A DNA stretch of 64,000 nt from Macrostomum lignano (taxonomy: Eukaryota). Position numbers and translations under genes: made by a program. The notes under the pieces are model-generated. The model did not search any database. It worked only from the letters and a program-made list of their open reading frames with translations, and was not told where the DNA came from. Positions 8,851-59,393 of the stretch are shown here, piece after piece. Location: NCBI GenBank assembly GCA_002269645.1, contig NIVC01003606.1, positions 1 through 64,000 of the forward strand, written 5' to 3'. Position 1 is the stretch's first letter, and every line of letters starts with the position of its first letter.

Positions 8851-10185
8851 TGAAGCAGGATGCAGGAATAGAATGGATTGCTAATCTAGCCTACATCATG
8901 CCTCTAACTAAAAAATTGTGTCTGTCTGCTTACGTATCCGTGACAGCAAGACAAACTAATTGTCTGTATTTAGCTACAAGGCTACAAACTTGAAAAATGA
9001 CAAAATTACAAATAGAGCTCTGTGCAGCAAGCACTCACCTGTCTCTGTACGTCAAACAAGTGCAGCAGTGTCCCTACAGCAGTCTGTAGATTATAGCGAT
9101 CGAACCAATTTTAAACCAGTCCGTGCATTCACTAAAATGTTAAACCGCGCTTATATGTTGTGTTGCTTTTTAAGAGTCCACCGCTTGCTTGCCGCCCCCT
9201 TGCCACTTTGATTGGCTGCTGTTGGTTGGTGGGACCGAGGCTCTCAGGCTTGGCCAGTGAGGGAGGCTAGCAACTGTTTTACTGAGCCACAAAGGAGGCT
9301 CTTGCAGGCTTCGCTTTTAGTAATATTATTATTAGTAATTTTATTGCGGTAAGAATGGGGGGTCTGTTATGGCTTTATTGGCGAACCCGAAGTCAGGAGT
9401 CGGCAAGGGGAGCTGTCAGAACCCGAGGGGAAATACATTCATTCACTGTGCTTCATTCCCGTTCATTCAAGCAGTTCTCAGGTCAAGCGCCGAGAACAGA
9501 AGGGGCAGGGGTGAAGGGAGAGACCGCACAGCAGGCAATGACTTATATTTTATGTGGCCGGTCCCTGTGCACACGCGGTACACACGGGAGGAACTGGGGC
9601 GGTCCAGGCCAGGGGAGGATAGAGCTATGGGGAGAGGTAGTTCTCTGTAGTCTACTGTGCTGGCGTGGCTTAGGAAAGGCGGGCGGCTGACTCACCTATG
9701 GGATGGGCTTTGACTATGCAGGAAGCAAACGGGGGAAGGCAGCTTGCTGCTAAAAATAGTAACAAAAATCTTCCCCAGGCGAGGCCGGACTAATCCCCCA
9801 GGTGCAAAGAGGAAGAGGGAATCGGGAAGTTGTGGTGTAGGTAGGAATTGATGTGTAGACACAAGGGGAAAAGGGAAAGGAGACGAGAGAGATGGGACAA
9901 TGGGATCTAAAAGCTACACACGTCGTTACAACTCGTATTGTGGACAGATAGTGCAGCCTACCTGAATCTTTTCAGTGCAGAGCTTGGGGCGGTGGCTCCG
10001 GTTACCGTAGTGTAGTGGGCGGTGGCGCTCACGCATGCTCTTAATATGCTCACTTATAACCATATGGGTCACGCCCCCCCCCAAAGCTGGCAATAATTAT
10101 ATGGCACCCTTGGTGCTGGCTAACATATGATATGATCAAATGAATGACGAGCTTTGAAGCTGCCAAACTGTAAATCCCATTGCGC

Positions 10186-10582
10186 GCATGTGTCAGTGTG
10201 TGTCAATCAATCTGCGCGAATGTGTCAGTGCGTGTCAATCAATCTGCGCGCATGTGTCAGTGCGTGTCAATCAATCTGCGCGCATGTGTCAGCGCGTGTC
10301 AATCAATCTGCGCGCATGTGTCAGCGCGTGTCAATCAATCTGCGCGCATGTGTCAGCGCGTGTCAATCAATCTGCGCGCATGTGTCAGCGCGTGTCAATC
10401 AATCTGCGCGCATGTGTCAGCGCGTGTCAATCAATCTGCGCGCATGTGTCAGCGCGTGTCAATCAATCTGCGCGCATGTGTCAGTGTGTGTCAATCAATC
10501 TGCGCGCATGTGTCAGCGCGTGTCAATCAATCTGCGCGCATGTGTCAGTGCGTGTCAATCAATCTGCGCGCATGTGTCAGCG
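10186..10582. repeat. Minisatellite, 30-bp unit (GTGTCAATCAATCTGCGCGCATGTGTCAGC)
   Basis: Tandem array; it explains ORFs 10154-10625. Confidence 0.95.
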
Positions 10583-11126
10583 CCAAAACACTGAACATAG
10601 ATTTACATTAAAATGCCCGCTTTAAATCTGACATTTCAATTTTTCTGCATGCGGATTTTTTCATTGCAATCGAGAATAACAAGGATTTTAATTTCTTGAT
10701 GGTCTCTGACGGTACGGGTAGGAGCCTTCGCGCCTCATATTTTATTTGAAATGATAGTTTTGCGTACACACAAAGCCAAGCTGTCATGTGCTGTCATTCC
10801 ATCATTAAACTCGCTTCATAAGAATATATATTTTTTTAGTTTACAGTCAATCATGATAATGCAGATACAGGTATATTTGACACATGATTTCGCGTTTTTC
10901 TGCTCTTAAAATATTTATGTAAGGGCAAGGCGGGGGGCATTGGCAGACTTCCAATTTCCCCAGTATAGCTTGGCCAACCAGAACAAATTACTTAATCGCT
11001 GAGCGAGAAAGCAGAAGACTCAGTGAGATCGCGCGTCAATCAAATGGTGGCATTTGATTGGCATCACTGGGATATTGCTAGGAGGGATGCAAAACTCCCG
11101 TCACATTTGGCTCATGACAACAATTA

Positions 11127-11137
11127 AAAATTTAATC

Positions 11138-11172
<35 letters not shown>

Positions 11173-11200
11173 AAACAACAACAGCAACAAAAAAACAAAC

Positions 11201-11233
<33 letters not shown>

Positions 11234-11266
11234 GCACAACAACAACAACAACAATAACAACAACAA
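11127..11266. repeat. (CAA)n microsatellite, upstream flank of the ribozyme element
   Basis: Imperfect CAA run. Confidence 0.95.
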
Positions 11267-11383
11267 CCCCCCTGGGATTTACTCCCAGCCTGCTGGGTAA
11301 CCAGCAGGCCCTTTCCGGCGCCGCGTCTTTGTCGCGGGGGGGGAGGCAACGCCCGTTCTTCGGGCGGCGAAGAGCGCCGGGAA
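11266..11383 (+). ncRNA. HDV-like self-cleaving ribozyme (candidate)
   Basis: Manual fold. P1: C6 11267-72 with G-run 11336-43. J1/2: two hairpins (11273-87, 11289-308). P2: (TTCC)GGCGC 11313-21 with GCGCC(GGGAA) 11374-83. P3: GCG/CGC with L3 UCUUUGU. P1.1: C-G plus U-A. Then GCAAC, P4 CGCCCG-uucuu-CGGGCG, and GGCGAA carrying the C75-equivalent at 11368. Confidence 0.75.
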
Positions 11384-11515
11384 TCGGTCACCGCTCCTGG
11401 CTCAGGGGCGGTGAGTGTGGCTCGGTCCGGCCCTCTGTGCTCAGCCTTTGTCGCTGGCTCTGTCAGCGGTAGGGGTTTGGTACCTGGTCCGGTTATTTCG
11501 AGCTCGGTCCGCAGT
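11267..11515 (+). mobile_element. Short non-autonomous retroelement candidate: ribozyme head, structured 3' domain, (CAA)n tail
   Basis: GC-rich, hairpin-dense ~250-bp insert bounded on both sides by (CAA)n. No ORF beyond repeat-derived frames. Confidence 0.55.
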
Positions 11516-11516
11516 C

Positions 11517-11557
<41 letters not shown>

Positions 11558-11563
11558 AAACAA
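11516..11563. repeat. (CAA)n microsatellite / putative tail
   Basis: CAA run directly after ...GGTCCGCAGT. Confidence 0.95.
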
Positions 11564-11894
11564 TAAGATACGCAGTCCCGCATGCAAGGTTAGAGCAGGG
11601 CGCTTCTGATGGCGCGCCGCAGAGCCTGAGAGCGGACGAATTCCGCCCCGATGGCAGAGCGTCGCATAGCAGACAGTTAAAGTTAAATCAAGGACGAACT
11701 AAGTAATAAATTAATAATCATAAAGTACTAAATTATGTCTAAGTAGTAATAGAGACGGCAGACATTGGCCCTAAATTTCTACTTAAAGTAAGGTGAATTG
11801 CCAAAGGACTCCAACACGTCAAATCTATAAAAAAATACACAGACCTGATTTGCATGCACTAAAGGTGTAGGGTGTGAAGAACCCACCCTTAATT

Positions 11895-12580
11895 ATCTGC
11901 TCCCAACCCACTCCTCCTTATCTGCACCCAACCCACCCCTCCTTTTCTGCACCCAACCCACCCCTCCTTTTCTGCACCCAACCCACCCCTCCTTTTCTGC
12001 ACCCAACCCCCTGCTTTTCTGCACCCAACCCCCCTCCTTTTCTGCACCCAACCCCCTGCTTTTCTGCACCCAACCCCCCTCCTTTTCTGCACCCAACCCC
12101 TGCTTTTCTGCACCCAACCCACCCCTCCTTTTCTGCACCCAACCCACCCCTCCTTTTCTGCACCCAACCCCCTGCTTTTCTGCACCCAACCCCCTGCTTT
12201 TCTGCACCCAACCCACCCCTCCTTTTCTGCACCCAACCCCCTGCTTTTCTGCACCCAACCCACCCCTCCTTTTCTGCACCCAACCCACCCCTCCTTTTCT
12301 GCACCCAACCCCCTGCTTTTCTGCACCCAACCCCCCTCCTTTTCTGCACCCAACCCCCTGCTTTTCTGCACCCAACCCCCCTCCTTTTCTGCACCCAACC
12401 CCCTGCTTTTCTGCACCCAACCCCCTCCTTTTCTGCACCCAACCCCCTGCTTTTCTGCACCCAACACACCCCTCCTTTTCTGCACCCAACCCACCCCTCC
12501 TTTTCTGCACCCAACCCCCTGCTTTTCTGCGCCCAACCCCCTGCTTTTCTGCACCCAACCCCCTGCTTTTCTGCGCCCAA
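11895..12580. repeat. Minisatellite, ~24-28-bp unit (TTTTCTGCACCCAACCCACCCCTCC)
   Basis: Tandem array; it explains ORFs 11874-12647. Confidence 0.95.
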
Positions 12581-12873: not shown

Positions 12874-13313
12874 TCAGATGCACTTGAACATCATCTTCGA
12901 TGTGGAAATCTGTGTCCAGGTGCCGAACAGGTGCACGTGATTAACGTTGTGCCGGTCGTCTGGCACCGGACTGTCGGCAAACAGGCCGTTGAGCAGGATG
13001 GAGAAGCAGGTGTTGAACCACCAGCCAGCACCGGCGTGCTGCCTGGAGCACAGGGTGCCGGCCGGGGAGCCGCCAGCGTCGAAGGTGCTAAACATGGCGT
13101 TGTTCTCGTTGACCAGCGTCCTGCCGGGGTCCAGGCTGCCCGCGCTGTCCGGTCCCGTCACGTTCAGCCTGTAGCTGTCGTTTGCCGGCTGCACTTTAAA
13201 GCCGGACCATTCGCCCCACAGCGGCTGGCCCGACACGGTCAGCACTTCGATTCGGAGTCGGCAGTTTGCGTAGAACAGGCTGCCCACCGTGCGGGCGCTC
13301 AGCTGCTGCAGGC
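12874..13313 (-). CDS. Fibrinogen-related protein (FReD), last exon
   Basis: Encodes LQQLSAR...LRIEV...FKV...YRLNV...NNAMFSTFD...CSRQHAGAGWWFNTCFSILLNG...SKMMFK*, the fibrinogen C-terminal domain. Acceptor cccgcag|GC. Confidence 0.92.
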
Positions 13314-13349
13314 CTGCGGGACGGCCGGGGGACACCCTTTCGCAACGCA

Positions 13350-13612
13350 TTCGGTGACATCGTCTCACAACCAGCGCTGACGTACGCAGGCACGCACTCA
13401 TGCACTCTCGCTCACACAGGGTGTACGGCGGCCCCTGAATTTCTAATCGTTAGGCACAATCGTTCAATAGTCTGACCCTCATGGCTGTGAATCGCATACG
13501 ACAACCCCCAGAGCCAATTTTCATGCACTCAAGCCCCAAATGCATGAGAACCACGGGGTCAGGGCGCGCGATTCAGACGCGTTCACCGCAAAGCCGCCCT
13601 GCTGCTCCCTAA
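13350..13612 (-). mobile_element. tRNA-derived SINE, head type II, filling most of a FReD intron
   Basis: The core is similar to the type I SINE core (CACACAGG..GTGTAC..GCGGCCC..AATCGT..GGCA) but carries a different tRNA-like head. Confidence 0.65.
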
Positions 13613-20350: not shown

Positions 20351-20903
20351 ACTTTGGCTTATCTCCTTGTACTTATATAGGTAGCTCAAATTGCTTGCCA
20401 GTAAGTACAGTGTCTGCATGGTTCCTATTTCAAATTCTTGCTGATAATTCATAATTGTAGGATTCGAACTAGCTCACGGATGAATCGAAATGCTTTGAGA
20501 CTAAAAAAATGATCAAGACAAATCCTCAGTGCTCTATAAAAGACAGCATTGTTTAGTTAATATAAGAGCATTGCTTCTTGTCAGTGAAGTTAATAATGAG
20601 CCGATCAATTGCTATTGTCTATGGCCGCGAGTGGCATTGGCTCCTGCTTACGAGTACTTATCGGACGTAATTTATCACTTCACACTGACAAAAGCAAAGC
20701 GAGTTATCAGTTGAACCCCGGTGCACAGGTGTGCAAATCAGTGCACTATTATTTGTTTTACTGAGTGTCCAGTCACTCACAGTTGTTTCACAGGGATAAA
20801 TATTGGTTTAATAGCGCGATTTACCCTTGCTTAGTCGCTGCGAGTTATGGGAAGAGGCATGGAAAGAAGAAATCAGTTATTGCTGCAGCACAATTGGGTT
20901 TAG

Positions 20904-21267
20904 GTTTTTTTTTATTAGAGGCAGGGGGGTTGTGTGCACCCTGGCGCACTTTAGGCGACATTGTCACACAACCGGCGAGAGGCATTACTGCCCATTCCGC
21001 CGACTCCCCTGAGCAGGCATACAAGCGCGAGGATACGTTACGCAGGCACACAATCACACAGGACTGTACAGCGGCCCTAACTTTATCAATTGTTAGGCAT
21101 GTACACTTCACTGCGCCTTGGGGGGTTGGCTCTCAAGGCCGTTAATTGCACAAGCGAGCCAAGCCGAGATTCCAATTCAGCCCCAAATTAATGTGACTGC
21201 ACTTGGAATCGAGCCTGGGTCGCTGGCACACCAGAGCAGCTGCGCTACCGCTGGGCTACGGCCCCCC
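20904..21267 (-). mobile_element. tRNA-derived SINE, head type I, full length
   Basis: Reverse complement of the 46914-47273 copy, including A/B boxes and a poly(A) tail. Confidence 0.88.
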
Positions 21268-25327: not shown

Positions 25328-25374
25328 AAGAATGATTTATTAACGATTTCAAGGCATGATTCAAGCATGATTAA

Positions 25375-27835
25375 CAGTAGGAATACCAAGCCATTTTTCC
25401 GCCCGTCGAACTACCAAGGGAGGGGGGGAAAATTCCCCCCCCCTGACAAATTTTTTTGCTGCGCCGGAACGGAGCAACGCAGACACACAAAATTCAAGAA
25501 CACGGGCTAACTTTTTGTTGCGCACCTTCTCAAACAAGAATCAAGTCGCCAGCCCTCCGGACCGTCGAGATATTCGACGATTCTGCCAGAAGGTCGGATT
25601 TTTCCCATAAGCGCTAGTGTATTCAGTACACCCCTGTGCGCCAATCAGCACTGCGCCTCAGTGCAGCCTTGCCAAGTCTCCAAATTTCATCAGCACGTCG
25701 ACCACATGTGTCTGCATCAGCTCTGACTTCGTTGGTCACTAGCCTTCACCCAGGCGGAGCTTCTGGACCTTCAACAGGTGGCACCAAGTGACTATGGACA
25801 CTCTGATACGAATTTCTCGAGTTTCGCTGATCAAGCCTCGACAGTGGGCATACCTCAACTGCTAGGTATCCTCAGCTAGTCTCTCGAGCCTTCCATCATC
25901 ACCCCGACGCCGTCGGCACCTTCAACGGATTACACCAGGTGACTATGAACACCCTGATGCAAATTTCTCTAGTTTCGCTGATCAAGCCTTGCCAATGGGC
26001 AAGCCTCAACCGCGGAACATCTTCAGCTAGTCTCTCAAGCATTCAGTCATCACTCGGACGCCGTCGGCACCTTCAACAGATGACACCAGGCGACTATGAA
26101 CACCCTGATGCAAATTTCTCGAGTTTCACCGATCAAGCCTCGACAGTAGGCAAGCCTCAACTGCCGGACACCCTCAGCTAGTCTCTCAAGCATTCCGTCA
26201 TCATCCCGACGTCGTCGGCTCCTTCAACAGATTACACCAGCTGACTATGGACAGCCTGATAATAATTTCTCTAATTTCGCTGATCAAGCCTCGATAGTGG
26301 GCAAAAATCAACTGCTGGACATCCTCAGCTAGTCTCTCAAGCATTCCGTCATCATCCCGACGCCGTCGGCTCCTTCAACAGATTACACCAGCTGACTATG
26401 GACAGCCTGATAATAATTTTTCTAATTTCGCTGATCAAGCTTCAATATTGGGCAAACCTCAACTGCTGGACATCCTCAGCTAGTCAGTCAAGCATTCCGT
26501 CATCACCCCGACGCCGTCGGCACCTTCAACAGGTGGCACCAGGGGAGTAATGACACCTGAGCGTGATTTTTCATCATGCTCTTAACATTTCTGAAGCTCT
26601 CAAAATTTTTCAAGCACGGAAATTGCTATAGTTATGCTTGTTGCTGTATATTTATATTATTATTACACATACTTTTATGCATACGAGCTACATACATATT
26701 TTATTCGAAAAGCTGTTTAGTTTATTCAGCTATAATACTGAACCCAATGCAGAAAGGGTTATGCTTTAAAAAAGCCAGTAAATTCAGTCGGTTTTTTCAT
26801 TTTTTAATTATTATGATTCAGAAATGTTAAGAGCATGATGAAAAATCACGCTCACGTGTCATTACTCCCCTGGTGCCACCTGTTGAAGGTGCCGACGGCG
26901 TCGGGGTGATGACGGAATGCTTGACTGACTAGCTGAGGATGTCCAGCAGTTGATTTTTGCCCACTATCGAGGCTTGATCAGCGAAATTAGAGAAATTATT
27001 ATCAGGCTGTCCATAGTCAGCTGGTGTAATCTGTTGAAGGAGCCGACGGCGTCGGGATGATGACGGAATGCTTGAGAGACTAGCTGAGGGTGTCCGGCAG
27101 TTGAGGCTTGCCTACTGTCGAGGCTTGATCGGTGAAACTCGAGAAATTTGCATCAGGGTGTTCATAGTCGCCTGGTGTCATCTGTTGAAGGTGCCGACGG
27201 CGTCCGAGTGATGACTGAATGCTTGAGAGACTAGCTGAAGATGTTCCGCGGTTGAAGCTTGCCCATTGGCAAGGCTTGATCAGCGAAACTAGAGAAATTT
27301 GCATCAGGGTGTTCATAGTCACCTGGTGTAATCCGTTGAAGGTGCCGACGGCGTCGGGGTGATGATGGAAGGCTCGAGAGACTAGCTGAGGATACCTAGC
27401 AGTTGAGGTATGCCCACTGTCGAGGCTTGATCAGCGAAACTCGAGAAATTCGTATCAGAGTGTCCATAGTCACTTGGTGCCACCTGTTGAAGGTCCAGAA
27501 GCTCCGCCTGGGTGAAGGCTAGTGACCAACGAAGTCAGAGCTGATGCAGACACATGTGGTCGACGTGCTGATGAAATTTGGAGACTTGGCAAGGCTGCAC
27601 TGAGGTGAGTGTACTGAATACACTAGCGCTTATGGGAAAAATCCGACCTTCTGGCAGAATCGTCGAATATCTCGACGGTCCGGAGGGCTGGCGACTTGAT
27701 TCTTGTTTGAGAAGGTGCGCAACAAAAAGTTAGCCCGTGTTCTTGAATTTTGTGTGTCTGCGTTGCTCCGTTCCGGCGCAGCAAAAAAATTTGTCAGGGG
27801 GGGGGGAATTTCCCCCCCCCTTGGTAGTTCTACTG
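25375..27835. mobile_element. Foldback-type element: ~1.0-1.2-kb inverted arms with 151-bp subrepeats and a ~220-bp AT-rich spacer
   Basis: Arm 25375-26595 is the reverse complement of arm 26817-27835. Ends are TTAA-CAGTAG..CTACTG-TTAA. CCTTCAAC recurs at 25768, 25919, 26070, 26221, 26372 and 26523. Confidence 0.88.
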
Positions 27836-27929
27836 TTAAGGTGGGAGTGAGGTATACTTCAGGTGGGACCCAGCTAACTATGTTTTGGACCCTTGAAAAG
27901 ATTTTTAAACAGTTCAGAACGGTTCTCAC

Positions 27930-28100
27930 CCGAATATCCTCGGGATTCATGTCGCTGATGTTGGTTTCCAGAACTTCAACATCCCCGTTAGACGCGATGG
28001 CCATTGGGTTCATTGCCTCGCCCAGGTTGGCGTCCACCTGCGAGTACATCAGGCTGCGACTGTTTACGGTGCTCCTTGGCGGGCTGTGCACGTACCACAG
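27930..28100 (-). CDS. GPR158-like: GPR158-like, exon 9
   Basis: Encodes LWYVHSPPRSTVN...ISDMNPEDIR. ttccag| and CGG|gtgaga, phase 0-0. Confidence 0.85.
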
Positions 28101-28194
28101 CTGGAACAGTCGAGAGGTGGAAGGTGGAAATTACTGGTCAGGCTTGGATTAAATAGGGTCTCCGGTTCCTTGAATTTGTGTTACTGGTTTCTTA

Positions 28195-30600: not shown

Positions 30601-30606
30601 ACTTAC

Positions 30607-30785
30607 CGATAAATCTTCACAACCAAAGTGCCGTAGGTAACGGCAAAGCCAATCTCTCTAAACCACGGTATCATAAAGCAGATTTCGTAGCTGGGCTGCA
30701 GGTACATCAGGAACACGGTTGCATACAGCATGGCCACGCCCAGCAAGAACAGCTCCAGCAGAATCCACACGGCAGCTTTTATCAC
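30607..30785 (-). CDS. GPR158-like: GPR158-like, exon 5 (TM2-TM3)
   Basis: Encodes VIKAAVWILLELFLLGVAMLYATVFLMYLQPSYEICFMIPWFREIGFAVTYGTLVVKIYR, matching GPR158 ILLE..L.G..LLY...W.R.LGFA..YGT..LK..R. Confidence 0.93.
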
Positions 30786-30879
30786 CTGAAATTTGACAGT
30801 TCCAGAACTCAATGAGTGATTGACTTTATAGCATCTATGGCTAAATTCGCTAAATTTTACGTCATAGACTAGGGAGGTC

Positions 30880-31490
30880 ACACAAAGACTAGTGATGACT
30901 TGGTCATACAGACCAGGCTGTTGGTCACACAGCCTAGTGAGTTGGTCACAAAAATGAGAGAGCTGGTCACAGATTTTAGACACTGGGTTGATCACAGATG
31001 TTAGACGCTGAGTTAGTCACACATGCTAGCGAGTTGGTCACACATGCTAGCGAGTTGGTCACACAGGCTAGAGATTGAGTTGGTCACACAGGCTAGAGAC
31101 TGAGTTGGTCACACAGGCTAGAGACTGAGTTGGTCACACAGGCTAGAGACTTAGTTGGTCACACAGGCTAGAGATTGAGTTGGTCACTCAGGCTAGCGAG
31201 TTGGTCACTCAGGCTAGCGAGTTGGTCACTCAGGCTAGCGAGTTGGTCACTCAGGCTAGCGAGTTGGTCACTCAGGCTAGCGAGTTGGTCACTCAGGCTA
31301 GCGAGTTGGTCACTCAGGCTAGCGAGTTGGTCACTCAGGCTAGCGAGTTGGTCACTCAGGCTAGCGAGTTGGTCACTCAGGCTAGCGAGTTGGTCACTCA
31401 GGCTAGCGAGTTGGTCACTCATGCTAGCGAGTTGGTCACTCAGGCTAGCGAGTTGGTCACTCAGGCTAGCGAGTTGGTCACACAGGCTGG
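30880..31490. repeat. Minisatellite, 21-bp unit (GAGTTGGTCACTCAGGCTAGC)
   Basis: Tandem array filling an intron. Confidence 0.96.
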
Positions 31491-42164: not shown

Positions 42165-42493
42165 TCACAGCGGCTCCATATCCTCGCAGTCTACCTCCAC
42201 CTTGATGTACATGGTGTCGTCTTTGATGTAGTCCAGAGTGCCGATCACTTCCAGTTCGGCGAATCGAGCCGCCCCGAAACTGGCGTTTCTCTCGCCAACC
42301 GGACGGCCGAGGAATGGTCGGTTCTCCTTGCACGTGTTGGGCTTCACCACGTACACAATGTTCCTACGGGCGGCCACGTCTTCGCATTGGTCTATCAGGT
42401 GGAAGGTGATCTTGTAGGCGAACGGCCAGGCCAGCAGCGGGTCGTTGTCGCCTTTGCAGATGCACACGAATAGGGACATGTACTTGCCACGGC
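42165..42493 (-). CDS. TRAF4-like: TRAF4-like protein, exon 5 (MATH/TRAF-C domain, stop)
   Basis: Encodes RGKYMSLFVCICKGDNDPLLAWPFAYKITFHLIDQ...YIKDDTMYIKVEVD. ccgcag|GC. Confidence 0.95.
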
Positions 42494-42529
42494 CTGCGGC
42501 GGTTTGGCGAATAGGGGACGGTTAGCGAT

Positions 42530-42825
42530 TGTGTCACTCCCTAGTGAGTGTTGTGTCACTCCCTAGTGATTGTTGTGTCACTCCCTAGTGAGTGTTGTGT
42601 CACTCCCTAGTGAGTGTTGTGTCACTCCCCAGTGAGTGTTGTGTCACTCCCCAGTGAGTGTTGTGTCACTCCCTAGTGAGTGTTGTGTCACTCCCCAGTG
42701 AGTGTTGTGTCACTCCCTAGTGAGTGTTGTGTCACTCCCCATTGAGTGTTGTGTCACTCCCTAGTGTCTGTTGTGTCACTCCCTAGCGTCTGTTGTCACT
42801 CCCTAGTATCTGTTGTGGCGCTCCC
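42530..42825. repeat. Minisatellite, 22-bp unit (GTGTCACTCCCTAGTGAGTGTT)
   Basis: Tandem array. Confidence 0.93.
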
Positions 42826-43224
42826 TATTCTCGAAAGTTCTTCGGTGCGGCATGCTCTTATCCTCAAGTAGTTGACTTCCTAGGAAGACTCCGGTGTGTC
42901 ACTCCTAATTCTCAGGAAAATTGATTTCATCCCATAAATTTTTTGTGCTCTCAGTAGTTCCATGTGCGATCATGCCACCCCCTCACTGCAGTTCTAAAGC
43001 TCCGGGCCTCGATCACCACCGCGCCTCCATCCCACTGATCCATCATTTCCGTGCAGTAATGTTTTGGTCAGGAACGTCTGGGTTATTATTATTATAAATG
43101 CTGCAGCTCTCGGTTGTGACTGATGATGCTGGCAGGCAGCTGGGGGTTGGGGGCCAGACACATCTAGGTAAACTTTTTCTTTTCACTGCACTGACCTGAA
43201 CTAACTTTACTTCACTTCACTTCA

Positions 43225-44510
<1,286 letters not shown>

Positions 44511-44532
44511 CTCCTAGGAGCAGAAGACTCAC

Positions 44533-44866
44533 TCTTGCCATCGCCATAGAGACAGGCGGACATGGCGAGCTTGTATCCGTGCCGGTTGGTGAGGAACGGC
44601 GGGCTGAAGATGGTGGACTTCTTGCCGCTCTTGGCCTCCGCCAGTTTCTCCTCGTAGTTGTCGATCTTCCAGATGAGCTGCGGTCCGTACAAGTTCTCCA
44701 GCCCGTTGATCCGGCGCTCGATGCCCAGCATCTTCTTCTCCATCTCTTGTATGGCTTTGTCTTGATTCTCGCGATTTTTGTCTCCCTGCTTGACTGCGGC
44801 GCACAGAATCTCCATGTGGTTGAGCTGCTTGGCGGCCACGTGCTCCTTCATCGCCTTCTTCTTGCC
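44533..44866 (-). CDS. TRAF4-like: TRAF4-like protein, exon 4 (coiled coil and start of MATH)
   Basis: Encodes GKKKAMKEHV...LIWKIDNYEEKL...IFSPPFLTNRHGYKLAMSACLYGDGK. ccccag| and A|gtgagt. Confidence 0.95.
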
Positions 44867-44899
44867 CTGGGGAGTCGGTTGGGCGTGCAATATGAGCTG

Positions 44900-45800
44900 T
44901 GCAATATCAGATGTAATCAGGTGTGCAATAGCATATAATCAGGTGTGCAATAGCATATAATCAGGTGTGCAATAGCATATAGTCTGGTGTGCAATAGCAT
45001 ATAATCAGGTGGGCAATAGCATATAGTCTGGTGTGCAATAGCATATAATCAGGTGTGCAATAGCATATAATCAGGTGTGCAATAGCATATAGTCAGGTGT
45101 GCAATAGCATCTAGTCAGGTGTGCAATAGCATATAGTCAGGTGTGCAATAGCATCTAGTCTGGTGTGCAATAGCATCTAGTCAGGTGTGCAATAGCATAT
45201 AGTCAGGTGTGCAATAGCATATAGTCAGGTGTGCAATAGCATATAATCAGGTGTGCAATAGCATATAGTCTGGTGTGCAATAGCATATAATCAGGTGTGC
45301 AATAGCATATAATCAGGTGTGCAATAGCATATAATCAGGTGTGCAATAGCATATAGTCTGGTGTGCAATAGCATATAGTCAGGTGTGCAATAGCATATAA
45401 TCAGGTGGGCAATAGCATATAGTCAGGTGTGCAATAGCATATAGTCAGGTGTGCAATAGCATATAATCAGGTGTGCAATAATATATATTCAGGTGTGCAA
45501 TAGCATATAGTCAGGTGTGCAATAGCATATAATCAGGTGTGCAATAGCATATAATCAGGTGTGCAATAGCATATAATCAGGTGTGCAATAGCATATAGTC
45601 TGGTGTGCAATAGCATATAGTCTGGTGTGCAATAGCATCTAGTCTGGTGTGCAATAGCATATAGTCTGGTGTGCAATAGCATCTAGTCTGGTGTGCAATA
45701 GCATCTAGCCAGGTGTGCAATAGCATATAGTCAGGTGTGCAATAGCATATAATCCGGTGTGCAATATAAAATCAGCTGTGCAATCAGGTGTGCAATAGCA
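44900..45800. repeat. Minisatellite, 22-bp unit (CAGGTGTGCAATAGCATATAAT)
   Basis: Tandem array. Confidence 0.96.
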
Positions 45801-46284
45801 TAGCTGATTGCATCAGCAAACTCATATTCCATTGTACTCAATTGTGCTTTTCGATAGTGGATCTTGAGGTACAAGAAATTTATTTTATGAGTCTAGTCCC
45901 CTTTAGTTTCCTCATTTCATTCACCCGTTAACTATTCATACGCAGTAATAACCAGCTTACATCACTGCACCCATTGAAATCTCGCATAAACAGTTCCCTG
46001 TGGCTGTCACAGTCATCAAAGTCTGATTGTTCGACTTGCTCTGTTCTCAATTTTTTCTTGGAGCTCTGTAGCCTGGCTTCCTGCCATGGGATTTTCGATT
46101 TCTTTGCTCAGCTGACAGGTGCTGTCAGGCTGAGGATTGAGTCTGATTGGCTGACTGTATTTGTCTGGGACTGCGGCATTCAGAAAGGCCTGGCTTTGTT
46201 TGCTTTGGGCGTTGGCTTGGGGCTTTCCATTTGCCTTGCTTGCTTCAGCTTTTGAACTGGCGCTGGCAGCTTCTCAGATTGAAG

Positions 46285-46898
46285 AGGGGATGGAGGAGAG
46301 AGGGGAGAGGAAAGGAGAGGGGAGAGAGGGGAGAGGGGAGAGGAGAGGGGAGAGGGGAGAGGGGAGAGGAGAGGGGAGAGAGGAGAGAGGGGAGAGGGGA
46401 AAGGAGAGGGGAGAGAGGGGAGAGAGGAGAGATGAGAGGAGAGAGAGAGTAGAGAGGAGAGGGAAGGGGGGATGGAGGAGAGGGGAGAGAGGAGAGAAGA
46501 GAGGGGGGAGAGGAGAGGGGAGAGGAGAGATGAGAGGAGAAAGAGAGTAGAGAGGAGAGGGAATGGGGATGGAGGAGAGGGGAGAGAGGAGGGAAGAGAG
46601 GGGAGAGAGGAGAGGGGAGAGGAGAGATGAGAGGAGAAAGAGAGTAGAGAGGAGAGGGAATGGGGATGGAGGAGAGGGGAGAGAGGAGGGAAGAGAGGGG
46701 AGAGAGGAGAGGGGAGAGGAGAGATGAGAGGAGAAAGAGAGTAGAGAGGAGAGGGAAGGGGGATGGAGGAGAGGGGAGAGAGGAGGGAAGAGAGAGGAGA
46801 GAGGAGAAAGGAGAGAAGAAAGGGGAGAGGAGGGGGAGAGAGCAGAGGGAGGGTAGAGGAGAGGGGAAAGAGGAGAGGGTAGAGTGGAGAGGAGAGAG
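46285..46898. repeat. AG-rich low-complexity satellite
   Basis: Purine-rich tandem array. Confidence 0.93.
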
Positions 46899-46913
46899 TA
46901 AGCTATACACATT

Positions 46914-47273
46914 GGGGGGCCGTAGCCCAGCGGTAGCGCAGCTGCTCTGGTGTGCCAGCGGCCCAGGCTCGATTCCAAGTGCAGCCACATTAATTTGGGG
47001 CTGAATTGGAATTTCGGCTTGGCTCGCTTGTGCAATTAACGGCCTTGAGAGCCAACCCCCCAAGGCGCAGTGAAGTGTACATGCCTAACAATTGATAAAG
47101 TTAGGGCCGCTGTACACTCCTGTGTGAGTGTGTGCCTGCGTAACGTATCCGCGCGCTTGTATGCCTGCTCAGGGGAGTCGGCGGAATGGGCAGTTAATGC
47201 CTCTCGCCGGTTGTGTGCCTGTCGCCTAAAGTGCGCCAGGGTGCACACAACCCCCCTGCCTCTAAAAAAAAAA
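46914..47273 (+). mobile_element. tRNA-derived SINE, head type I, full length
   Basis: GGGGGGCCGTAGCCCAGCGG (A box), GGCTCGATTCC (B box), shared core, and a 3' CCTGCCTCT(A)n tail. Confidence 0.9.
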
Positions 47274-47370
47274 CTAATCACATTTCAACAAAAAGACGCC
47301 ATAGTTTTGAAGCAGCAATAAAATTTACACAGAGCTGGAACAGTGCGAATGGCGCAAGTCCTGAACTCAC

Positions 47371-47688
47371 AGTGAACTGGCAGCCGTAGCTGGCAAACGG
47401 ACAGTTGAGGTCCTGCTTCATGCACTCATTTTCCAGGTGCTCGGTGAGTCGCTCCCTGGCCACCTCCCTTCGCTTGCACTTATTCGGGCAGGGCACCAGG
47501 AACTTAGGGCAGATCTCCAGGTGCTCGGCCTCGTTCTCAGCAATCAGGCGGATCTCGCAGAACTGGCAGTGAATCTCGCGCTTCGGACAATCGTCGTTGC
47601 GGTGCTTCTCCAGGAAGCGCTTCTCGAATTCCACGCCGCAGCGCATCGGGCAGGTCGTCATCATGCGGTCGCAGCCCTCCATGTGGGC
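47371..47688 (-). CDS. TRAF4-like: TRAF4-like protein, exon 3 (TRAF-type zinc fingers)
   Basis: Encodes AHMEGC...CPMRCG...HRNDDCPKREIHCQFC...HLEICPKFLVPCPNKC...HLENEC...CPFASYGCQFT, phase 0-0. Confidence 0.95.
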
Positions 47689-48145
47689 CTGCGGTTCGCG
47701 GAGGGGTGCTTTGCTTTTCTGGTGGGCTATTTTATTTTACTGTTGCGATTTTTTTGATTTACTGATTTGATATTTTAAGTTTACCTGTGAGGTTTTCTAG
47801 TTTACAAAATCAATCATCAGTTTCTCTAATAGCATTTTTTGTTTTACTAGTTGAATAGTTTCATTTCTTTTTAATGCTGATTTTGTTTTTCTAAATACGT
47901 AGATATAATCGTAGATATAATTAATTGATTCTTGTTCTTTGTATATAGCAGTTAGACTGTTGTTGTTAGCCTACTTTTAGTAGGCCGCATCAAACTATTA
48001 TAGTAAATAATCTTCAGACATAATGAATTTTTCCGTGTTTAATAGCCAGTCTCAATATTCACCCTAATATCAGTGAACTCATTATTCACATAAGTACCCA
48101 CAAACTCATCATTCACAGCAGTACATGTGAACTTCTCAGACTCAC

Positions 48146-48299
48146 CATGAGCTCGAGCAGCAAGCCAGTCCACGGACAGCCCCGGGCGCTGAAGGAGCAT
48201 TTAACACCAAGATTGTCCGTCTCCTTCTGAAAGGCTTTGTCCACGTAGACCTTTTCCTTGTCGATGGCCACCTGGTCCAAGGGACACCTAGGCGCCACT
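48146..48299 (-). CDS. TRAF4-like: TRAF4-like protein, exon 2
   Basis: Encodes VAPRCPLDQ...DKAFQKETDNLGVKCSFSARGCPWTG. tttatag|A and ATG|gtgagt. Confidence 0.93.
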
Positions 48300-48514
48300 C
48301 TATAAAAAGCATTGGCGTTGTCGTTAAGTCCCATACTGTATCAGAAATTCATGTGAGACAATTTTTAAAGACTTTTACTCGTAGAGTCACTCCAGAAAAT
48401 TAAAAAGAAAAGTTTTAGAGACAAGTTTACTGCGTAAACATCGATCAGATTCACATCATTCAGGGTTAAATCTTCCACCGGAACATAATTTCCAAGGACA
48501 AAATTCAAGAGACG

Positions 48515-48880
48515 CATCTCCAAAGGACGTCCTTGTAACTTCCAGGGCCACATCTTCCAAGGACGTATCTTCTAGGGATACATCTTCCAAGGACGTATCT
48601 TCTAGGGATACATCTTCCAAGGACGTATCTTCCAGGGATACATCTTCCAAGGGGTATCTTTCAGGGATACATCTTCCAAGGGGTATCTTTCAGGGATACA
48701 TCTTTCGAGGGGTATCTTTCAGGGATACATCTTCCAAGGGGTATCTTTCAGGGATACATCTTTCGAGGGGTATCTTTCAGGGATACATCTTCCAAGGGGT
48801 ATCTTTCAGGGATACATCTTTCGAGGACGTATCTTCCAAGGATACATCTTCCAAGGAGGTATCATTCAGGAATACATCTT
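48515..48880. repeat. Minisatellite, 30-bp unit made of two 15-bp halves (CCAAGGACGTATCTT/CTAGGGATACATCTT)
   Basis: Tandem array. Confidence 0.9.
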
Positions 48881-48970
48881 CCAGGGAACAAATCTTTCAC
48901 AAACAAATCTTCCGGGAAACACATCGTCAGCTTCAACGAATCCAAATCAAGGAACGAGAAGGACACCCAC

Positions 48971-49314
48971 CGCAGCAGGTCGGGCAGGCAGGAGCTGCAG
49001 CAGCGGTGGCCGCACTCCTCAAACTGGACCGGATAGCGCAGGACCTGGCCGCACACCGGGCACTCGTATTTCTTGTCCAGCTGCTCCAGGAACACCACCT
49101 CGACCTCCTCCGTGATGCCGATACCGCTGCCGACTCCGACACCGCTGCCAACGCCGCCGCCTCCACGGCCGCCATCCGAAGAGGCGGAGTGCGGCAGCGA
49201 GCGGGACTGGCCGCTGGGCCCGCGGACTGGCGGCATCGGAGACCCCGTCCGTTTAGTCGGCGTGGCCGTAGCAGAGGCTGGACCAGACGATGGGGCACCG
49301 TTGGGCTCGGGCAT
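48971..49314 (-). CDS. TRAF4-like: TRAF4-like protein, exon 1 (RING finger)
   Basis: Encodes MPEPNG...KKYECPVCGQVLRYPVQFEECGHRCCSSCLPDLLR. CG|gtgggt. Confidence 0.93.
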
Positions 49315-50654
49315 GGCGTCTTCGCTGTTCAGAAACTATCAGTGCTTCGTTCTCGAGCTCGAGTTAACTGGATTTAGCCGGAGTGACCGCGCTAAGCCAA
49401 GACTGCTCTGCCGCCTCTGATATTGCCAGCTTTCTCTTCCTGCATCGCCACTCCTCAATCCCTGGCCCAGTGAGCAGCCCTCAGCTCTGCGATCCCCCGT
49501 CCCTCCGCCCTCCACCCCATTATTCTCCCGTTTGTCCCAGCGCCACTCGCAATTTCGTTCCTCGCCCGGTCTCCAGTGCAGAGCCTCAGCTTCGCCGCCC
49601 ACCCCAAACTAACGCGCCTACCCACGCCAAGCAGAGTGGTTACCATGACAACCGAGGCCGCGCACGAAATCAGCAGGCTCTGCCCGGTTGCCAACCAAAA
49701 AGTCCTCACTCAAAAAAGCTTGTACCGGGCTAGGCTTTCCTCCGCAGACTGCAGCCCCCCCCCCCCCCTACAAGACCCGCCAGCTGCCCTCGCCCCATCG
49801 TGTGGGTGAGCAGGAACAGCTGAAATAGAGGAACTGCCTATCACCATCTGTTGATCAAGTCAGTTATGCATTTAATTCCCATCAGTTCTGACTTGTGGAA
49901 GCCGACGGCTCCCATCCTGTCCCCACCCACCGGTTGTGCGTGACGCTCAATCTAGTGCCTGAGCCAGCGGACCGCATTGTTTCATGACCAGCAGCAGCAG
50001 CCACTTAGATATAGTGTTTTATCCCAGCTATCTGTTGTACTACACCACCTGTCCTCATCTATCCGACCTCGCTATCCTCATGAGCTCTTCCTCATGCATG
50101 CCGGGAGCAGTTTTTAAACTGTACACTCCCAATTCTTACTCTGCTCAAACAGAGCCTTCTTTCTCCTCCTATTGCTTCGATTTTTGGGATAATAAAAAGG
50201 GCAGAATGGGAGACGGACGAGCCGGCACCTCACCCCATGGTTTCCTGTTTATCCTGCAGCCCAGTCATCCCCCGCAGGCTGCAGTAGCGTGCTGAATTTT
50301 TTAGTTTTCTTACTACGAGTACAATGATTTGTCCCGGCAATTGGCCTGACGCCAGGTCTCCCAGTGACGGTCTGATGCTCGTCAGCGGTTTTGTTTGCTA
50401 CAAGCTTATCTAGCCTAGACCTTCCTCTGAAGTTAGTGACGATACTAGCAATTTTAGCACATTTTCTTAAGAACCAATTTCTTCTTAAGTTTAAAAAATT
50501 TAAATTAAAAAATTCATTTTAAGAATGAACCTTTTTCAAAGTAAAATTGTCGCAGACAAATATGTTTACTATGAATCTCTTTTTTTCTAAAATTAACAAA
50601 GACGACAAAATAAAGCTTTCACAAAGATAACAGACATCCCCCCTAAATAGAAAA

Positions 50655-52000
50655 CATCCCCCAGATAGCAAGCGATTCCCAGATAGCAAGCATCCCCCAG
50701 ATAGCAAGCATCCTGCAGATAGCAAGCATCCCTCAGATAGCAAGCATCTCCCAGATAGCAAGCATCCCCCAGATAGCAAGCACCCCCCAGATAGCAAGCA
50801 TCCCCCAGATAGCAAGCATCCCCCAGATAGCAAGCATCCCGCAGATAGCAAGCATCCCCCAGATAGCAAGCATCCCCCAGATAGCAAGCATCCCCCAGAT
50901 AGCAAGCATCCTGCAGATAGCAAGCACCCCCCAGATAGCAAGCATCCCTCAGATAGCAAGCATCCCCCAGATAGCAAGCATCTCCCAGATAGCAAGCATC
51001 CCTCAGATAGCAAGCATCTTCCAGATAGCAAGCATCCCACAGAGGGGGGCCGTAGCCCAGCGGTAGCGCAGCTGCTCTGGTGTGCCGCGACCCAGGCTCG
51101 ATTCCAAGTGCAGTCACATTAATTTGGGGCTGGATTGGAATCTTGGCTTGGCTCGCTTGTGCAATTAACGGCCTTGAGAGTCAACCCCCCCCCCCAAGGC
51201 GCAGTGAAGTGTACATGCCTAACAATTGATAAAGTTAGGGCCGCTGTACACTCCTGTGTGAGTGTGTGCCTGCGTAACGTATCCGCGCGCTTGTATGCCT
51301 GCTCAGGGGAGTCGGCGGAATGGGCAGTTAATGCCTCTCGCCGGTTGTGTGCCAATGACGCTTAAATTGCGACAGGGTGCACACAACCTCCCTGCCTCTA
51401 AAAAAAATAAAAAAAGCATCCCCCAGATAGCAAGCACCCCCCAGATAGCAAGCATCCCCCAGATAGCAAGCATCCCCCAGATAGCAAGCATCCCCCAGAT
51501 AGCAAGCATCCCCCAGATAGCAAGCACCCCCCAGATAGCAAGCATCCCCCAGATAGCAAGCATCCCCCAGATAGCAAGTACCCCCAGATAGCAAGCATCT
51601 CCCAGATAGCAAGCATCCCTCAGATAGCAAGCATCCCCCAGATAGCAAGCACCCCCAGATAGCAAGCATCCTGCAGATAGCAAGCATCCCCCAGATAGCA
51701 AGCACCCCCCAGATAGCAAGCATCCCCCAGATAGCAAGCATCCCCCAGATAGCAAGCATCCCCCAGATAGCAAGCATCCCCCAGATAGCAAGCATCCTGC
51801 AGATAGCAAACATCCCCCAGATAGCAAGCATCCCTCAGATAGCAAGCATCCCCCAGATAGCAAGCATCCTGCAGATAGCAAACATCCCCCAGATAGCAAG
51901 CATCCCTCAGATAGCAAGCATCCCCCAGATAGCAAGCATCCTGCAGATAGCAAACATCCCCCAGATAGCAAGCATCCCTCAGAGAGCAAGCATCTCCCCG
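50655..52000. repeat. Minisatellite, 18-bp unit (CCCAGATAGCAAGCATCC), interrupted by a SINE
   Basis: The array runs on both sides of 51044-51415. Confidence 0.95.
51044..51415 (+). mobile_element. tRNA-derived SINE, head type I, full length, inserted in a minisatellite
   Basis: Highly similar to 46914-47273, with an A-rich tail at 51400-51415. Confidence 0.9.
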
Positions 52001-53180: not shown

Positions 53181-53494
53181 GTGGGCCTGTCTGCTAGTGC
53201 CTGTTTCCATGGTAACAAGCTAAGCTCCGCTCACCCGCAGACTCCAGCAGTCGCTATGTCAAACTACCTCTAGCCGCGCTGAGACAGCAACCATGGCAAA
53301 GTTTAAATGCAGATGAAAGCATTAAAAGCGTAAGCGGCACTCTCTGCCGACACTTTGCAGCCACATCACATCGCAGTCAAAGTGCTTTATACTTTTTTCT
53401 CATGGTAGTTCTACCGTCGGACTGGCAGCTGAACGATGTGCAGATCAAGAGTGAGTGCACACTGTCTTCTGCGCCCTTTATTCCTAGAGCCGTC

Positions 53495-59355: not shown

Positions 59356-59393
59356 CACTGTCAACCTCAGCTACTCCCTGTTGTTGATTTCAG

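What the first reader, a model, noticed from the sequence alone, without database searches (positions are those of the whole stretch)
11266..11383. HDV-like self-cleaving ribozyme whose predicted cut site sits at a (CAA)n boundary
Seen in sequence: every element of the nested double pseudoknot can be assigned in order (P1 C-run/G-run, P2, P3 GCG/CGC, L3 UCUUUGU, P1.1, P4). The joining segments GCAAC and GGCGAA are the same as in the genomic HDV ribozyme and place a C75-equivalent at 11368. P1.1 shows a compensatory change: C22-G38 of HDV becomes U11328-A11344, with C11327-G11345 retained. J1/2 holds two extra hairpins, one with a GUAA tetraloop. Established knowledge: HDV-like ribozymes release the 5' end of several non-LTR retrotransposons (R2, R4, RTE, L1Tc/ingi and others) from host co-transcripts. 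Inference: cleavage near 11266/11267 would trim the transcript exactly at the end of the upstream microsatellite. Caveat: position +1 is A or C opposite G rather than the usual G.U, and the G8 run length may be an assembly error.
Basis: partly seen in the sequence, partly recalled or inferred. Interest (0 to 1): 0.92.

Follow-up and report, generated by a model that had tools for sequence, protein, structure and literature searches.

The report
HDV-like ribozyme heading a microsatellite-flanked element
A 114-base stretch folds on paper into a complete hepatitis-delta-type self-cutting RNA whose cut would fall where a (CAA)n repeat ends; it heads a 250-base structured unit with (CAA)n on both sides, most likely a small retrotransposon of a known kind in a flatworm genome.

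Summary
Window 11267-11380 (+) can form every helix of the HDV-type nested double pseudoknot (P1, P2, P3, P1.1, P4). It has the conserved L3 U/C/G and a J4/2 cytosine (C11368). A structure-plus-L3 descriptor matched 6 of 273,198 composition-preserving shuffles of the element.

Rfam would not call it. Its only ribozyme hit is HDV-F-prausnitzii at 25.1 bits against a gathering score of 44, and that alignment uses a weaker alternative P1.

Two P1 registers exist. The C-run register (cut 11266/11267, at the end of the (CAA)n tract) is about 8-10 kcal/mol better than the CCCUUUC register (cut 11308/11309).

Position +1 is C paired to G rather than the usual G.U. The experimentally active L1Tc ribozyme also starts with C1.

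The ribozyme heads a 250-nt unit (11267-11515). Its 3' half is strongly structured (z = -4.3), and (CAA)n flanks both ends. The closest precedents are Dong, whose ribozyme cuts exactly at a (TAA)n junction, and R2 SIDEs (5' ribozyme plus 3' end).

The host is Macrostomum lignano or a close relative. I could retrieve no other copy, so covariation, mobility and catalysis remain untested. Verdict: a new member of a known kind.

The parts
11137..11266 (+). Upstream imperfect (CAA)n tract, about 43 units. It would be the leader removed by cleavage.
   Evidence: TRF (88% matches). Predicted to be completely unpaired, with mean pairing probability 0.001.
11267..11273 (+). P1 5' strand, CCCCCCU. The predicted scissile bond is 11266/11267 and position +1 is C11267.
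   Evidence: Pairs with G11343-G11337. Duplex energy -14.9 kcal/mol.
11273..11309 (+). J1/2 insertion of two hairpins: 11273-87 (3-4 bp) and 11288-11309 (9 bp, GUAA tetraloop at 11297-11300).
   Evidence: Minimum-energy and centroid folds; pair list.
11309..11315 (+). Alternative P1 5' strand, CCCUUUC. It would cut at 11308/11309.
   Evidence: Used by the Rfam RF02682 alignment. Also found by the descriptor with J1/2 = 0. Duplex energy only -7.1 kcal/mol, and C11309 is the closing pair of hairpin 2.
11315..11321 (+). P2 5' strand, CCGGCGC.
   Evidence: Seven Watson-Crick pairs with 11374-11380; -14.1 kcal/mol.
11322..11336 (+). P3 (GCG/CGC plus an optional C11322-G11336 pair) closing L3 UCUUUGU (11326-32). 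L3 contains U11326, C11327 and G11331, the equivalents of the conserved U, C and G.
   Evidence: Matches the L3 consensus UCUaCGU of RF02682. The conserved U/G reverse wobble is described in PMC4227795 and PMC13635239.
11337..11343 (+). P1 3' strand. These are seven of the eight Gs in the run 11336-11343.
11344..11350 (+). P1.1 3' side, AG (pairs with U11328 and C11327), followed by the joiner GCAAC.
   Evidence: AGGCAACG matches the RF02682 consensus 8 of 8.
11350..11366 (+). P4 hairpin, 5-6 bp, loop UUCUU.
11366..11373 (+). J4/2, GGCGAAGA. C11368 is the candidate general-acid cytosine.
   Evidence: Aligned to CGGCUAAGA of RF02682.
11374..11380 (+). P2 3' strand, GCGCCGG. This is the 3' end of the ribozyme.
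11381..11515 (+). Structured 3' domain of the unit, two long hairpins. Candidate recognition region for a reverse transcriptase.
   Evidence: Minimum free energy -67.9 kcal/mol, z = -4.31, 0 of 200 shuffles as stable. The function is inferred.
11516..11563 (+). Downstream, nearly pure (CAA)16 tract: either a 3' tail or the other half of the target microsatellite.
   Evidence: TRF (95% matches); sequence.

Best explanation
Window 11267-11380 (+) encodes an HDV-like self-cleaving ribozyme. It forms the 5' end of a short, non-coding unit of about 250 nt (11267-11515) that sits in, or carries, a (CAA)n microsatellite. The host genome is Macrostomum lignano or a very close relative.

Proposed mechanism (inferred, not shown):
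1. The unit has no recognised promoter of its own and is transcribed as part of a longer host transcript that reads through the (CAA)n tract.
2. The unstructured (CAA)n leader cannot interfere with folding.
3. The C-run 11267-73 pairs with the G-run 11337-43 to form P1. P2, P3, P1.1 and P4 then close the double pseudoknot.
4. C11368 acts as general acid and cuts between A11266 and C11267.
5. The released RNA has a 5'-OH and starts at the first nucleotide after the microsatellite.
6. The structured 3' domain and the downstream (CAA)n would then allow target-primed reverse transcription into another (CAA)n tract. The enzyme would come from an autonomous partner that is not in this window.

This makes the unit analogous to a SIDE-type derivative (5' ribozyme plus 3' end) of a Dong-like, microsatellite-specific non-LTR element.
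For: Shown by the sequence and tools:
- The full helix set and the conserved nucleotides are present.
- Chance is excluded: 6 of 273,198 local shuffles matched, and 0.077 loose hits per shuffled window.
- The only ribozyme family aligned by Rfam is an HDV family, end to end over model positions 1-74, with exact core matches.
- The P1 register at the microsatellite boundary is 7.8 kcal/mol better as a duplex and 9.9 kcal/mol better in the nested context.
- The leader is unpaired and the C-run is largely free.
- (CAA)n lies on both sides.
- The 3' domain folds with z = -4.3.
- No long ORF lies in or next to the unit.

From the literature:
- Dong's HDV-like ribozyme releases exactly the (TAA)7 leader (PMC3774820).
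- The spacing between P1 and P1' in R2 ribozymes runs from 23 to more than 700 nt, and P1 alone sets the cut site.
- R2 SIDEs consist of a 5' ribozyme plus a 3' end (PMC3414825).
- L1TcRz is active with C1 and a G-C-rich P1 (PMC3185411).
- U:A pairs occur in P1.1 of two crystallised HDV-family ribozymes (PMC13635239).
Against: - Rfam does not reach the gathering score (25.1 versus 44). On the scale of the whole window and all families, E = 1.8.
- Position +1 is C-G, whereas one review lists G1 as invariant and the cleavage-site G.U as essential (PMC8495972).
- One extra G lies between P3' and P1'. Homopolymer length may be an assembly error.
- A nested competitor fold of -66.9 kcal/mol exists.
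- No second copy was found in the window, in protein databases via either open frame, in metagenome or viral contigs, or in phage records.
- Mobility, covariation and an autonomous partner are therefore all unshown.
Confidence: 0.6

Rival explanations
1. The same ribozyme core works as a compact 72-nt form. It uses the alternative P1 (CCCUUUC, 11309-15) and cuts at 11308/11309. The C-run and the two hairpins would then be leader, and the (CAA)n boundary would be a coincidence.
For: This is the register Rfam's RF02682 model aligns, full length over positions 1-74. My descriptor finds it too. The non-pseudoknot minimum-energy fold pairs CCCUUUCC with the G-run.
Against: - Three consecutive U.G pairs sit in mid-P1. 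The duplex is -7.1 versus -14.9 kcal/mol, and the nested set -42.8 versus -52.7.
- J1/2 would be 0 nt, and C11315 would be shared with P2.
- C11309 closes the 9-bp hairpin 2.
- Mid-P1 changes are reported to abolish activity (PMC8495972).
Confidence: 0.1
2. It is a decayed or never-active HDV-like fossil. The fold is homologous to a ribozyme, but this copy no longer cleaves because of C-G at +1, the extra G and its age as a single copy.
For: - G1 and the G.U wobble are called invariant or essential in PMC8495972.
- The upstream (CAA)n is degenerate at 88%, which suggests age.
- There is no other copy in 64 kb.
- Inactive R2 ribozymes with single core changes are documented.
Against: All helices are perfectly paired and no core position is damaged. 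L1TcRz cleaves with C1. The downstream (CAA)16 is still 95% pure.
Confidence: 0.17
3. It is a host-retained, single-copy cis-acting ribozyme of the CPEB3 type. It would process a host transcript (for example one antisense to the 3' end of the neighbouring fibrinogen-domain gene) and would not be part of a mobile element.
For: There is a single copy in the window. It lies 1.5 kb from the last exon of a gene on the other strand. No reverse transcriptase is nearby.
Against: (CAA)n lies on both sides of a compact 250-nt structured unit. That is the signature of microsatellite-specific retroelements, with Dong as precedent. I could obtain no evidence of conservation.
Confidence: 0.1
4. It is a chance resemblance in G+C-rich, repeat-rich DNA.
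For: Rfam's blind E-value is 1.8. The window is 41% tandem repeats. Loose structural hits occur at 0.077 per shuffled window.
Against: - Only 6 of 273,198 local-composition shuffles reach structure plus L3.
- On top of that come the 8/8 and 8/9 core matches to an HDV-family consensus, P2 of 7/7 Watson-Crick pairs and P4 of 5-6 bp.
Confidence: 0.03

Closest known systems
Dong (R4 clade, Bombyx mori) 5' HDV-like ribozyme
   Same: The ribozyme sits at the very 5' end of an element inserted in a trinucleotide microsatellite. Self-cleavage releases exactly the upstream repeat leader: a 21-nt (TAA)7 product (PMC3774820).
   Different: - Dong is autonomous (RT plus restriction-like endonuclease) and targets (TAA)n in an insect. 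Here the unit is 250 nt with no ORF, the repeat is (CAA)n and the host is a flatworm.
- By the published primer, Dong's first nucleotide is G. Here it is C.
- I could not test sequence relatedness.
R2 SIDEs (short internally deleted elements, Drosophila)
   Same: The architecture is a 5' HDV-like ribozyme fused directly to a 3' end that the parent's protein recognises. There is no ORF, and propagation depends on an autonomous partner (PMC3414825).
   Different: SIDEs insert in 28S rDNA and demonstrably derive from R2 or R1. Here no parent element is known, the flanks are microsatellite, and copy number is unknown.
R2 ribozymes with long J1/2
   Same: P1 and P1' are separated by 23 to more than 700 nt. 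P1 pairing alone decides the cut site, and two competing P1 sequences can coexist (PMC3774820).
   Different: Most R2 ribozymes borrow 28S sequence for P1. Here P1 is entirely element sequence, because (CAA)n cannot pair with a G-run.
L1TcRz (Trypanosoma cruzi L1Tc/NARTc)
   Same: It is an experimentally active HDV-like ribozyme whose product starts at C1, with a G-C-rich base of P1. It forms the first nucleotides of both an autonomous and a non-autonomous retroelement (PMC3185411).
   Different: L1TcRz has a single-pair P1.1 and doubles as an internal promoter. It is not associated with a microsatellite and comes from a different clade and host.
drz-Fpra-1 / Rfam RF02682 (HDV ribozyme from F. 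prausnitzii)
   Same: This is the only Rfam family that aligns. The core strings AGGCAACG and CGGC-AAGA, the L3 pattern UCU..GU and the C-G plus U-A P1.1 are shared.
   Different: It is bacterial, compact (74 nt) and starts with G1. The score of 25.1 bits is below the gathering score of 44. The resemblance is probably convergence on a constrained active site, as argued for R2 versus HDV in PMC3774820.

Membership tests
HDV-like self-cleaving ribozymes | Nested double pseudoknot: P1, P2, P3, P1.1 and P4 in the canonical order, with P1' directly after P3'. | tested here: met
   Descriptor hit and pair list. One extra G (11336) lies at the P3'/P1' junction; it can extend P3 to 4 bp.
HDV-like self-cleaving ribozymes | Catalytic cytosine in J4/2 just upstream of P2'. 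| tested here: met
   C11368 lies within GGCGAAGA, and P2' starts at 11374. It is aligned to the corresponding C of RF02682.
HDV-like self-cleaving ribozymes | Conserved L3 nucleotides: the U and G of the reverse wobble, and the C that enters P1.1. | tested here: met
   L3 is UCUUUGU, giving U11326, C11327 and G11331. Their conservation is stated in PMC4227795 and PMC3774820.
HDV-like self-cleaving ribozymes | G at +1 forming a G.U wobble at the cleavage site. | tested here: not met
   Position +1 is C (C11267-G11343, or C11309-G11343 in the other register). PMC8495972 calls G1 invariant. The active L1TcRz has C1, so the feature is usual rather than universal. It does lower the expected activity.
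HDV-like self-cleaving ribozymes | P1 of at least 6 contiguous pairs. | tested here: met
   Six C-G pairs plus one U.G. The requirement is stated in PMC8495972.
HDV-like self-cleaving ribozymes | A score above a curated Rfam HDV-family threshold. | tested here: not met
   There were no gathering-level hits. RF02682 gave 25.1 bits against 44, and no other HDV family appeared at E <= 10. The models ignore P2 and P1.1 and cannot span the 41-nt J1/2.
HDV-like self-cleaving ribozymes | Covariation supporting the helices across homologues. | tested here: inconclusive
   No homologue could be retrieved.
HDV-like self-cleaving ribozymes | Divalent-ion-dependent self-scission that depends on the J4/2 cytosine. 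| not testable with these tools
   This needs an in vitro transcription and cleavage assay.
Microsatellite-specific RLE non-LTR retrotransposons (R4/Dong-like, some HERO and NeSL families) | The same microsatellite abuts both the 5' and the 3' junction. | tested here: met
   (CAA)n lies at 11137-11266 and at 11516-11563.
Microsatellite-specific RLE non-LTR retrotransposons (R4/Dong-like, some HERO and NeSL families) | An ORF encoding reverse transcriptase and a restriction-like endonuclease. | tested here: not met
   The unit is 250 nt. Neither its open frames nor the nearby ORFs gave a Pfam RT hit. It is therefore not an autonomous member.
SIDE-type non-autonomous elements (5' ribozyme plus 3' end) | A 5' ribozyme joined directly to a structured 3' region, with no ORF. 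| tested here: met
   The ribozyme ends at 11380. Region 11381-11516 folds with z = -4.31.
SIDE-type non-autonomous elements (5' ribozyme plus 3' end) | Both ends derived from an identifiable autonomous parent, and multiple copies with junctions typical of target-primed reverse transcription. | not testable with these tools
   No collection available here holds the host genome. Only one copy lies in the 64-kb window.

The most novel reading that the evidence does not exclude
This could be the founding example of an undescribed family of ribozyme-headed, (CAA)n-specific non-autonomous retroelements in a free-living flatworm (Macrostomum). That would extend the SIDE architecture from rDNA to microsatellite targets. 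The ribozyme would naturally work with C-G rather than G.U at the cleavage site, and would carry a two-hairpin J1/2 domain capped by a GNRA tetraloop.
Probability: 0.4. Interest if true: 0.55.

Novelty: new member of a known kind. Interest (0 to 1): 0.42.

Why it matters
If active, this would be the first HDV-like ribozyme I could find reported for Macrostomum; a full-text search for the genus together with "ribozyme" found nothing relevant.

It would be a second, independent case, after Dong, of a ribozyme that trims a retroelement transcript exactly at a microsatellite junction.

It also offers a natural test of how much the cleavage-site G.U matters, because this ribozyme has C-G at that position.

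In practical terms, it would define the 5' end and a diagnostic motif for annotating a repeat family in a genome that is very repeat-rich (41% of this window is tandem repeats). The general principle, 5' processing of non-LTR co-transcripts by HDV-like ribozymes, is already established.

Tried and rejected
1. Rfam at gathering thresholds over the whole window gave nothing. In E-value mode only a sub-threshold RF02682 hit appeared. The CrcZ hits are (CAA)n artefacts.

2. I tried to find other copies through spurious ORFs.
   - The + frame translation in the search for homologous proteins gave no hit.
   - The open - frame in the 1.84-billion-protein representative library gave no hit.

3. A metagenome scan with GGGGAGGCAACN{10,30}CGGCGAAGAG gave 8 loci. 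None has an upstream P3/L3, so all are chance matches. The viral contigs gave 0 hits. A blastn search of phage records gave only noise.

4. blastn of the element and both flanks against the window found no second copy and no similarity between the flanks.

5. I looked for an orthologous locus via the neighbouring fibrinogen-domain exon and found no homologue at 1e-5. The TRAF4 exon search identified the host, but the matching protein is not on any stored contig.

6. I searched for a target-site duplication around the whole unit and found none. The only repeat is a 7-nt CGCAGTC on either side of the downstream (CAA)16.

7. I searched for alternative registers that would restore G at +1. None exists, because every partner position lies in the G-run.

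8. Several key papers are not in the library, so their content is not cited: Webb 2009, Ruminski 2011, Webb and Luptak 2011, and Perrotta and Been 1996.

Full report
**Observation.** The sequence at 11266-11383 is as described.
- A run of six C plus U (11267-73) follows directly on the last CAA of a 130-bp imperfect (CAA)n tract. It is complementary to seven of the eight G at 11336-43.
- CCGGCGC (11315-21) pairs perfectly with GCGCCGG (11374-80).
- GCG/CGC, optionally CGCG/CGCG, closes the 7-nt loop UCUUUGU.
- The AG that follows the G-run can pair with the CU of that loop.
- GCAAC leads into a 5-6 bp hairpin.
- GGCGAAGA then places C11368 five nucleotides (GAAGA) before the P2 3' strand.
- Between P1 and P2 lie two hairpins. 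The second has nine pairs and a GUAA loop.

**More than chance?** Rfam with curated thresholds reports nothing in the window. In E-value mode the only ribozyme family that aligns is HDV-F-prausnitzii (RF02682). It aligns full length at 25.1 bits against a gathering score of 44. The E-value is 0.0026-0.014 for the local region and 1.8 for the whole window across all 4227 families. That model sees only nested pairs and cannot bridge the 41-nt J1/2, so it uses a weaker upstream strand.

I therefore wrote a descriptor for the full pseudoknot. It requires P1 of 7 bp, P2 of 6 bp, P3, P1.1, P4, and C[G/U]AA before P2'.
- It matches once in the window, on the + strand only.
- 300 dinucleotide shuffles of the window gave 23 matches.
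- In 273,198 shuffles of the G+C-rich 250-nt element itself, 91 matched the structure. Only 6 also carried the conserved L3 U, C and G.
- The exact AGGCAACG and CGGC-AAGA agreement with the RF02682 consensus and the longer-than-required P2 and P4 come on top of this.

The fold is not a chance product.

**Where would it cut?** Two P1 registers fit.
- Register a uses CCCCCCU 11267-73 and cuts at 11266/67. Its duplex energy is -14.9 kcal/mol, and the nested set containing it scores -52.7.
- Register b uses CCCUUUC 11309-15 and cuts at 11308/09. Its duplex energy is -7.1 kcal/mol and its nested set -42.8.
- Register b has three consecutive U.G pairs, leaves no J1/2, shares C11315 with P2, and needs C11309, which closes the nine-pair hairpin.
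- Eickbush et al. state that the cut site of HDV-like ribozymes is set by which ~7 nt anneal to P1'. They report that this spacing ranges from 23 to more than 700 nt in R2, and that competing P1 sequences occur.

I therefore favour register a. The boundary itself is ambiguous by one nucleotide, because the next CAA unit would also begin with C. Adding the P1a and P2 contributions to the common hairpins gives about -67 kcal/mol. That is similar to the best non-pseudoknot competitor at -66.9, so misfolding is possible, as is known for this class.

**Deviations from the canonical ribozyme.**
- Position +1 is C paired with G. A review from the field lists G1 as invariant and the G.U as essential. 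However, the L1Tc ribozyme, which cleaves in vitro, yields a product starting at C1 with a G-C-rich P1.
- The U-A pair in P1.1 is not unusual. The RF02682 consensus has the same CU/AG, and two crystallised HDV-family ribozymes have U:A in P1.1.
- The eighth G is one more than the canonical junction needs.
- The host assembly shows homopolymer variation elsewhere: 6 versus 11 G between copies of an interspersed repeat. The run lengths should be verified.

**Context.**
- The window is from an animal genome and 41% of it is tandem repeats. It carries exons of TRAF4, a fibrinogen-domain gene and a class C GPCR.
- The TRAF4 exons match, in several reading frames, the frameshifted UniProt model A0A1I8F7W7 of Macrostomum lignano. 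The host is therefore this flatworm or a very close relative.
- Beyond the ribozyme, 11381-11516 folds into two long hairpins (z = -4.31). It is followed by a nearly pure (CAA)16.
- The unit is thus about 250 nt, non-coding, highly structured, and bounded by the same microsatellite on both sides.
- The leader is predicted to be entirely single-stranded, so it should not disturb folding of the ribozyme.

**Interpretation.** The arrangement copies two documented cases.
- Dong is an R4-clade element that inserts in (TAA)n. Its HDV-like ribozyme released exactly the 21-nt (TAA)7 leader in vitro.
- R2 SIDEs are non-autonomous elements made of a 5' ribozyme and a 3' end used by the parent's protein.

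RLE-encoding clades commonly target microsatellites. I therefore read the locus as a SIDE-like derivative of a (CAA)n-specific non-LTR element. Its ribozyme trims a read-through transcript at the element's first nucleotide. Its 3' domain plus downstream repeat would support target-primed reverse transcription.

The sequence anatomy and its statistical support are shown. Catalysis, the cut site, mobility and the partner element are inferred.

**Limits.** I could not obtain a single related sequence.
- There is no second copy in the window.
- Protein databases gave nothing for either open frame of the unit.
- The metagenome scan returned only chance matches, and viral or phage collections gave nothing.
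- No accessible contig exists for the host.

There is therefore no covariation test and no copy-number evidence. The rivals that remain open are a compact ribozyme cutting at 11309, an inactive fossil, and a host-retained single-copy ribozyme. Their weights are given in the report sections.

**Novelty.** The principle is known, and there is a direct microsatellite precedent in Dong. The new points would be the host lineage, the (CAA)n association, the very short non-autonomous form, and the natural C-G at the cleavage site. I rate it a new member of a known kind, of moderate interest.

Noticed in passing
window 42168-49335 (- strand): Exons of a TRAF4-type gene: RING, zf-TRAF, coiled coil and MATH domains. 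They match, across several reading frames, the frameshifted UniProt model A0A1I8F7W7 of Macrostomum lignano. This identifies the host and suggests that the public gene model is broken by indel errors.
   Followed up: partly
window 12877-13449 (- strand): Terminal exon encoding a fibrinogen C-terminal domain (Pfam E = 9.5e-14). No homologue was found at 1e-5 in the 5.8-billion-protein search. It ends 1.5 kb from the ribozyme, on the opposite strand.
   Followed up: partly
window 20900-21200 (+), 46980-47340 (-), 51060-51420 (-): Three copies, about 95% identical, of an interspersed repeat of roughly 300 bp that starts with a T-run. One internal G-run is 6 G in two copies and 11 G in the third, which shows homopolymer instability or miscalling in this assembly.
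   Followed up: partly
window 25371-28130: Two arrays of the same 151-bp satellite in opposite orientation (25767-26557 and 26869-27494). They are flanked by inverted copies of a segment of about 200 bp (25371-25607 on +, 27633-27830 on -). Together they form a large palindromic arrangement.
   Followed up: no
window 53480-59356: A 5.9-kb array of a 41-bp C-rich minisatellite, about 146 copies, with strong GC skew. Overall 41% of the window is tandem repeats with many different units of 10-43 bp.
   Followed up: no
window 11510-11516 and 11571-11577: The 7-nt string CGCAGTC occurs immediately before the downstream (CAA)16 and again 8 nt after it, and nowhere else in window 10001-12500. It could be a short duplication around a tail-only insertion, or chance.
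   Followed up: partly
window 11218-11330 and 11524-11610: The Rfam CrcZ 'hits' (E = 0.03) are artefacts. The CAA-rich model is matching the (CAA)n tracts.
   Followed up: yes
window 30606-31016 (- strand): Exon with a class C GPCR (7tm_3) transmembrane segment. It lies between minisatellite arrays.
   Followed up: no
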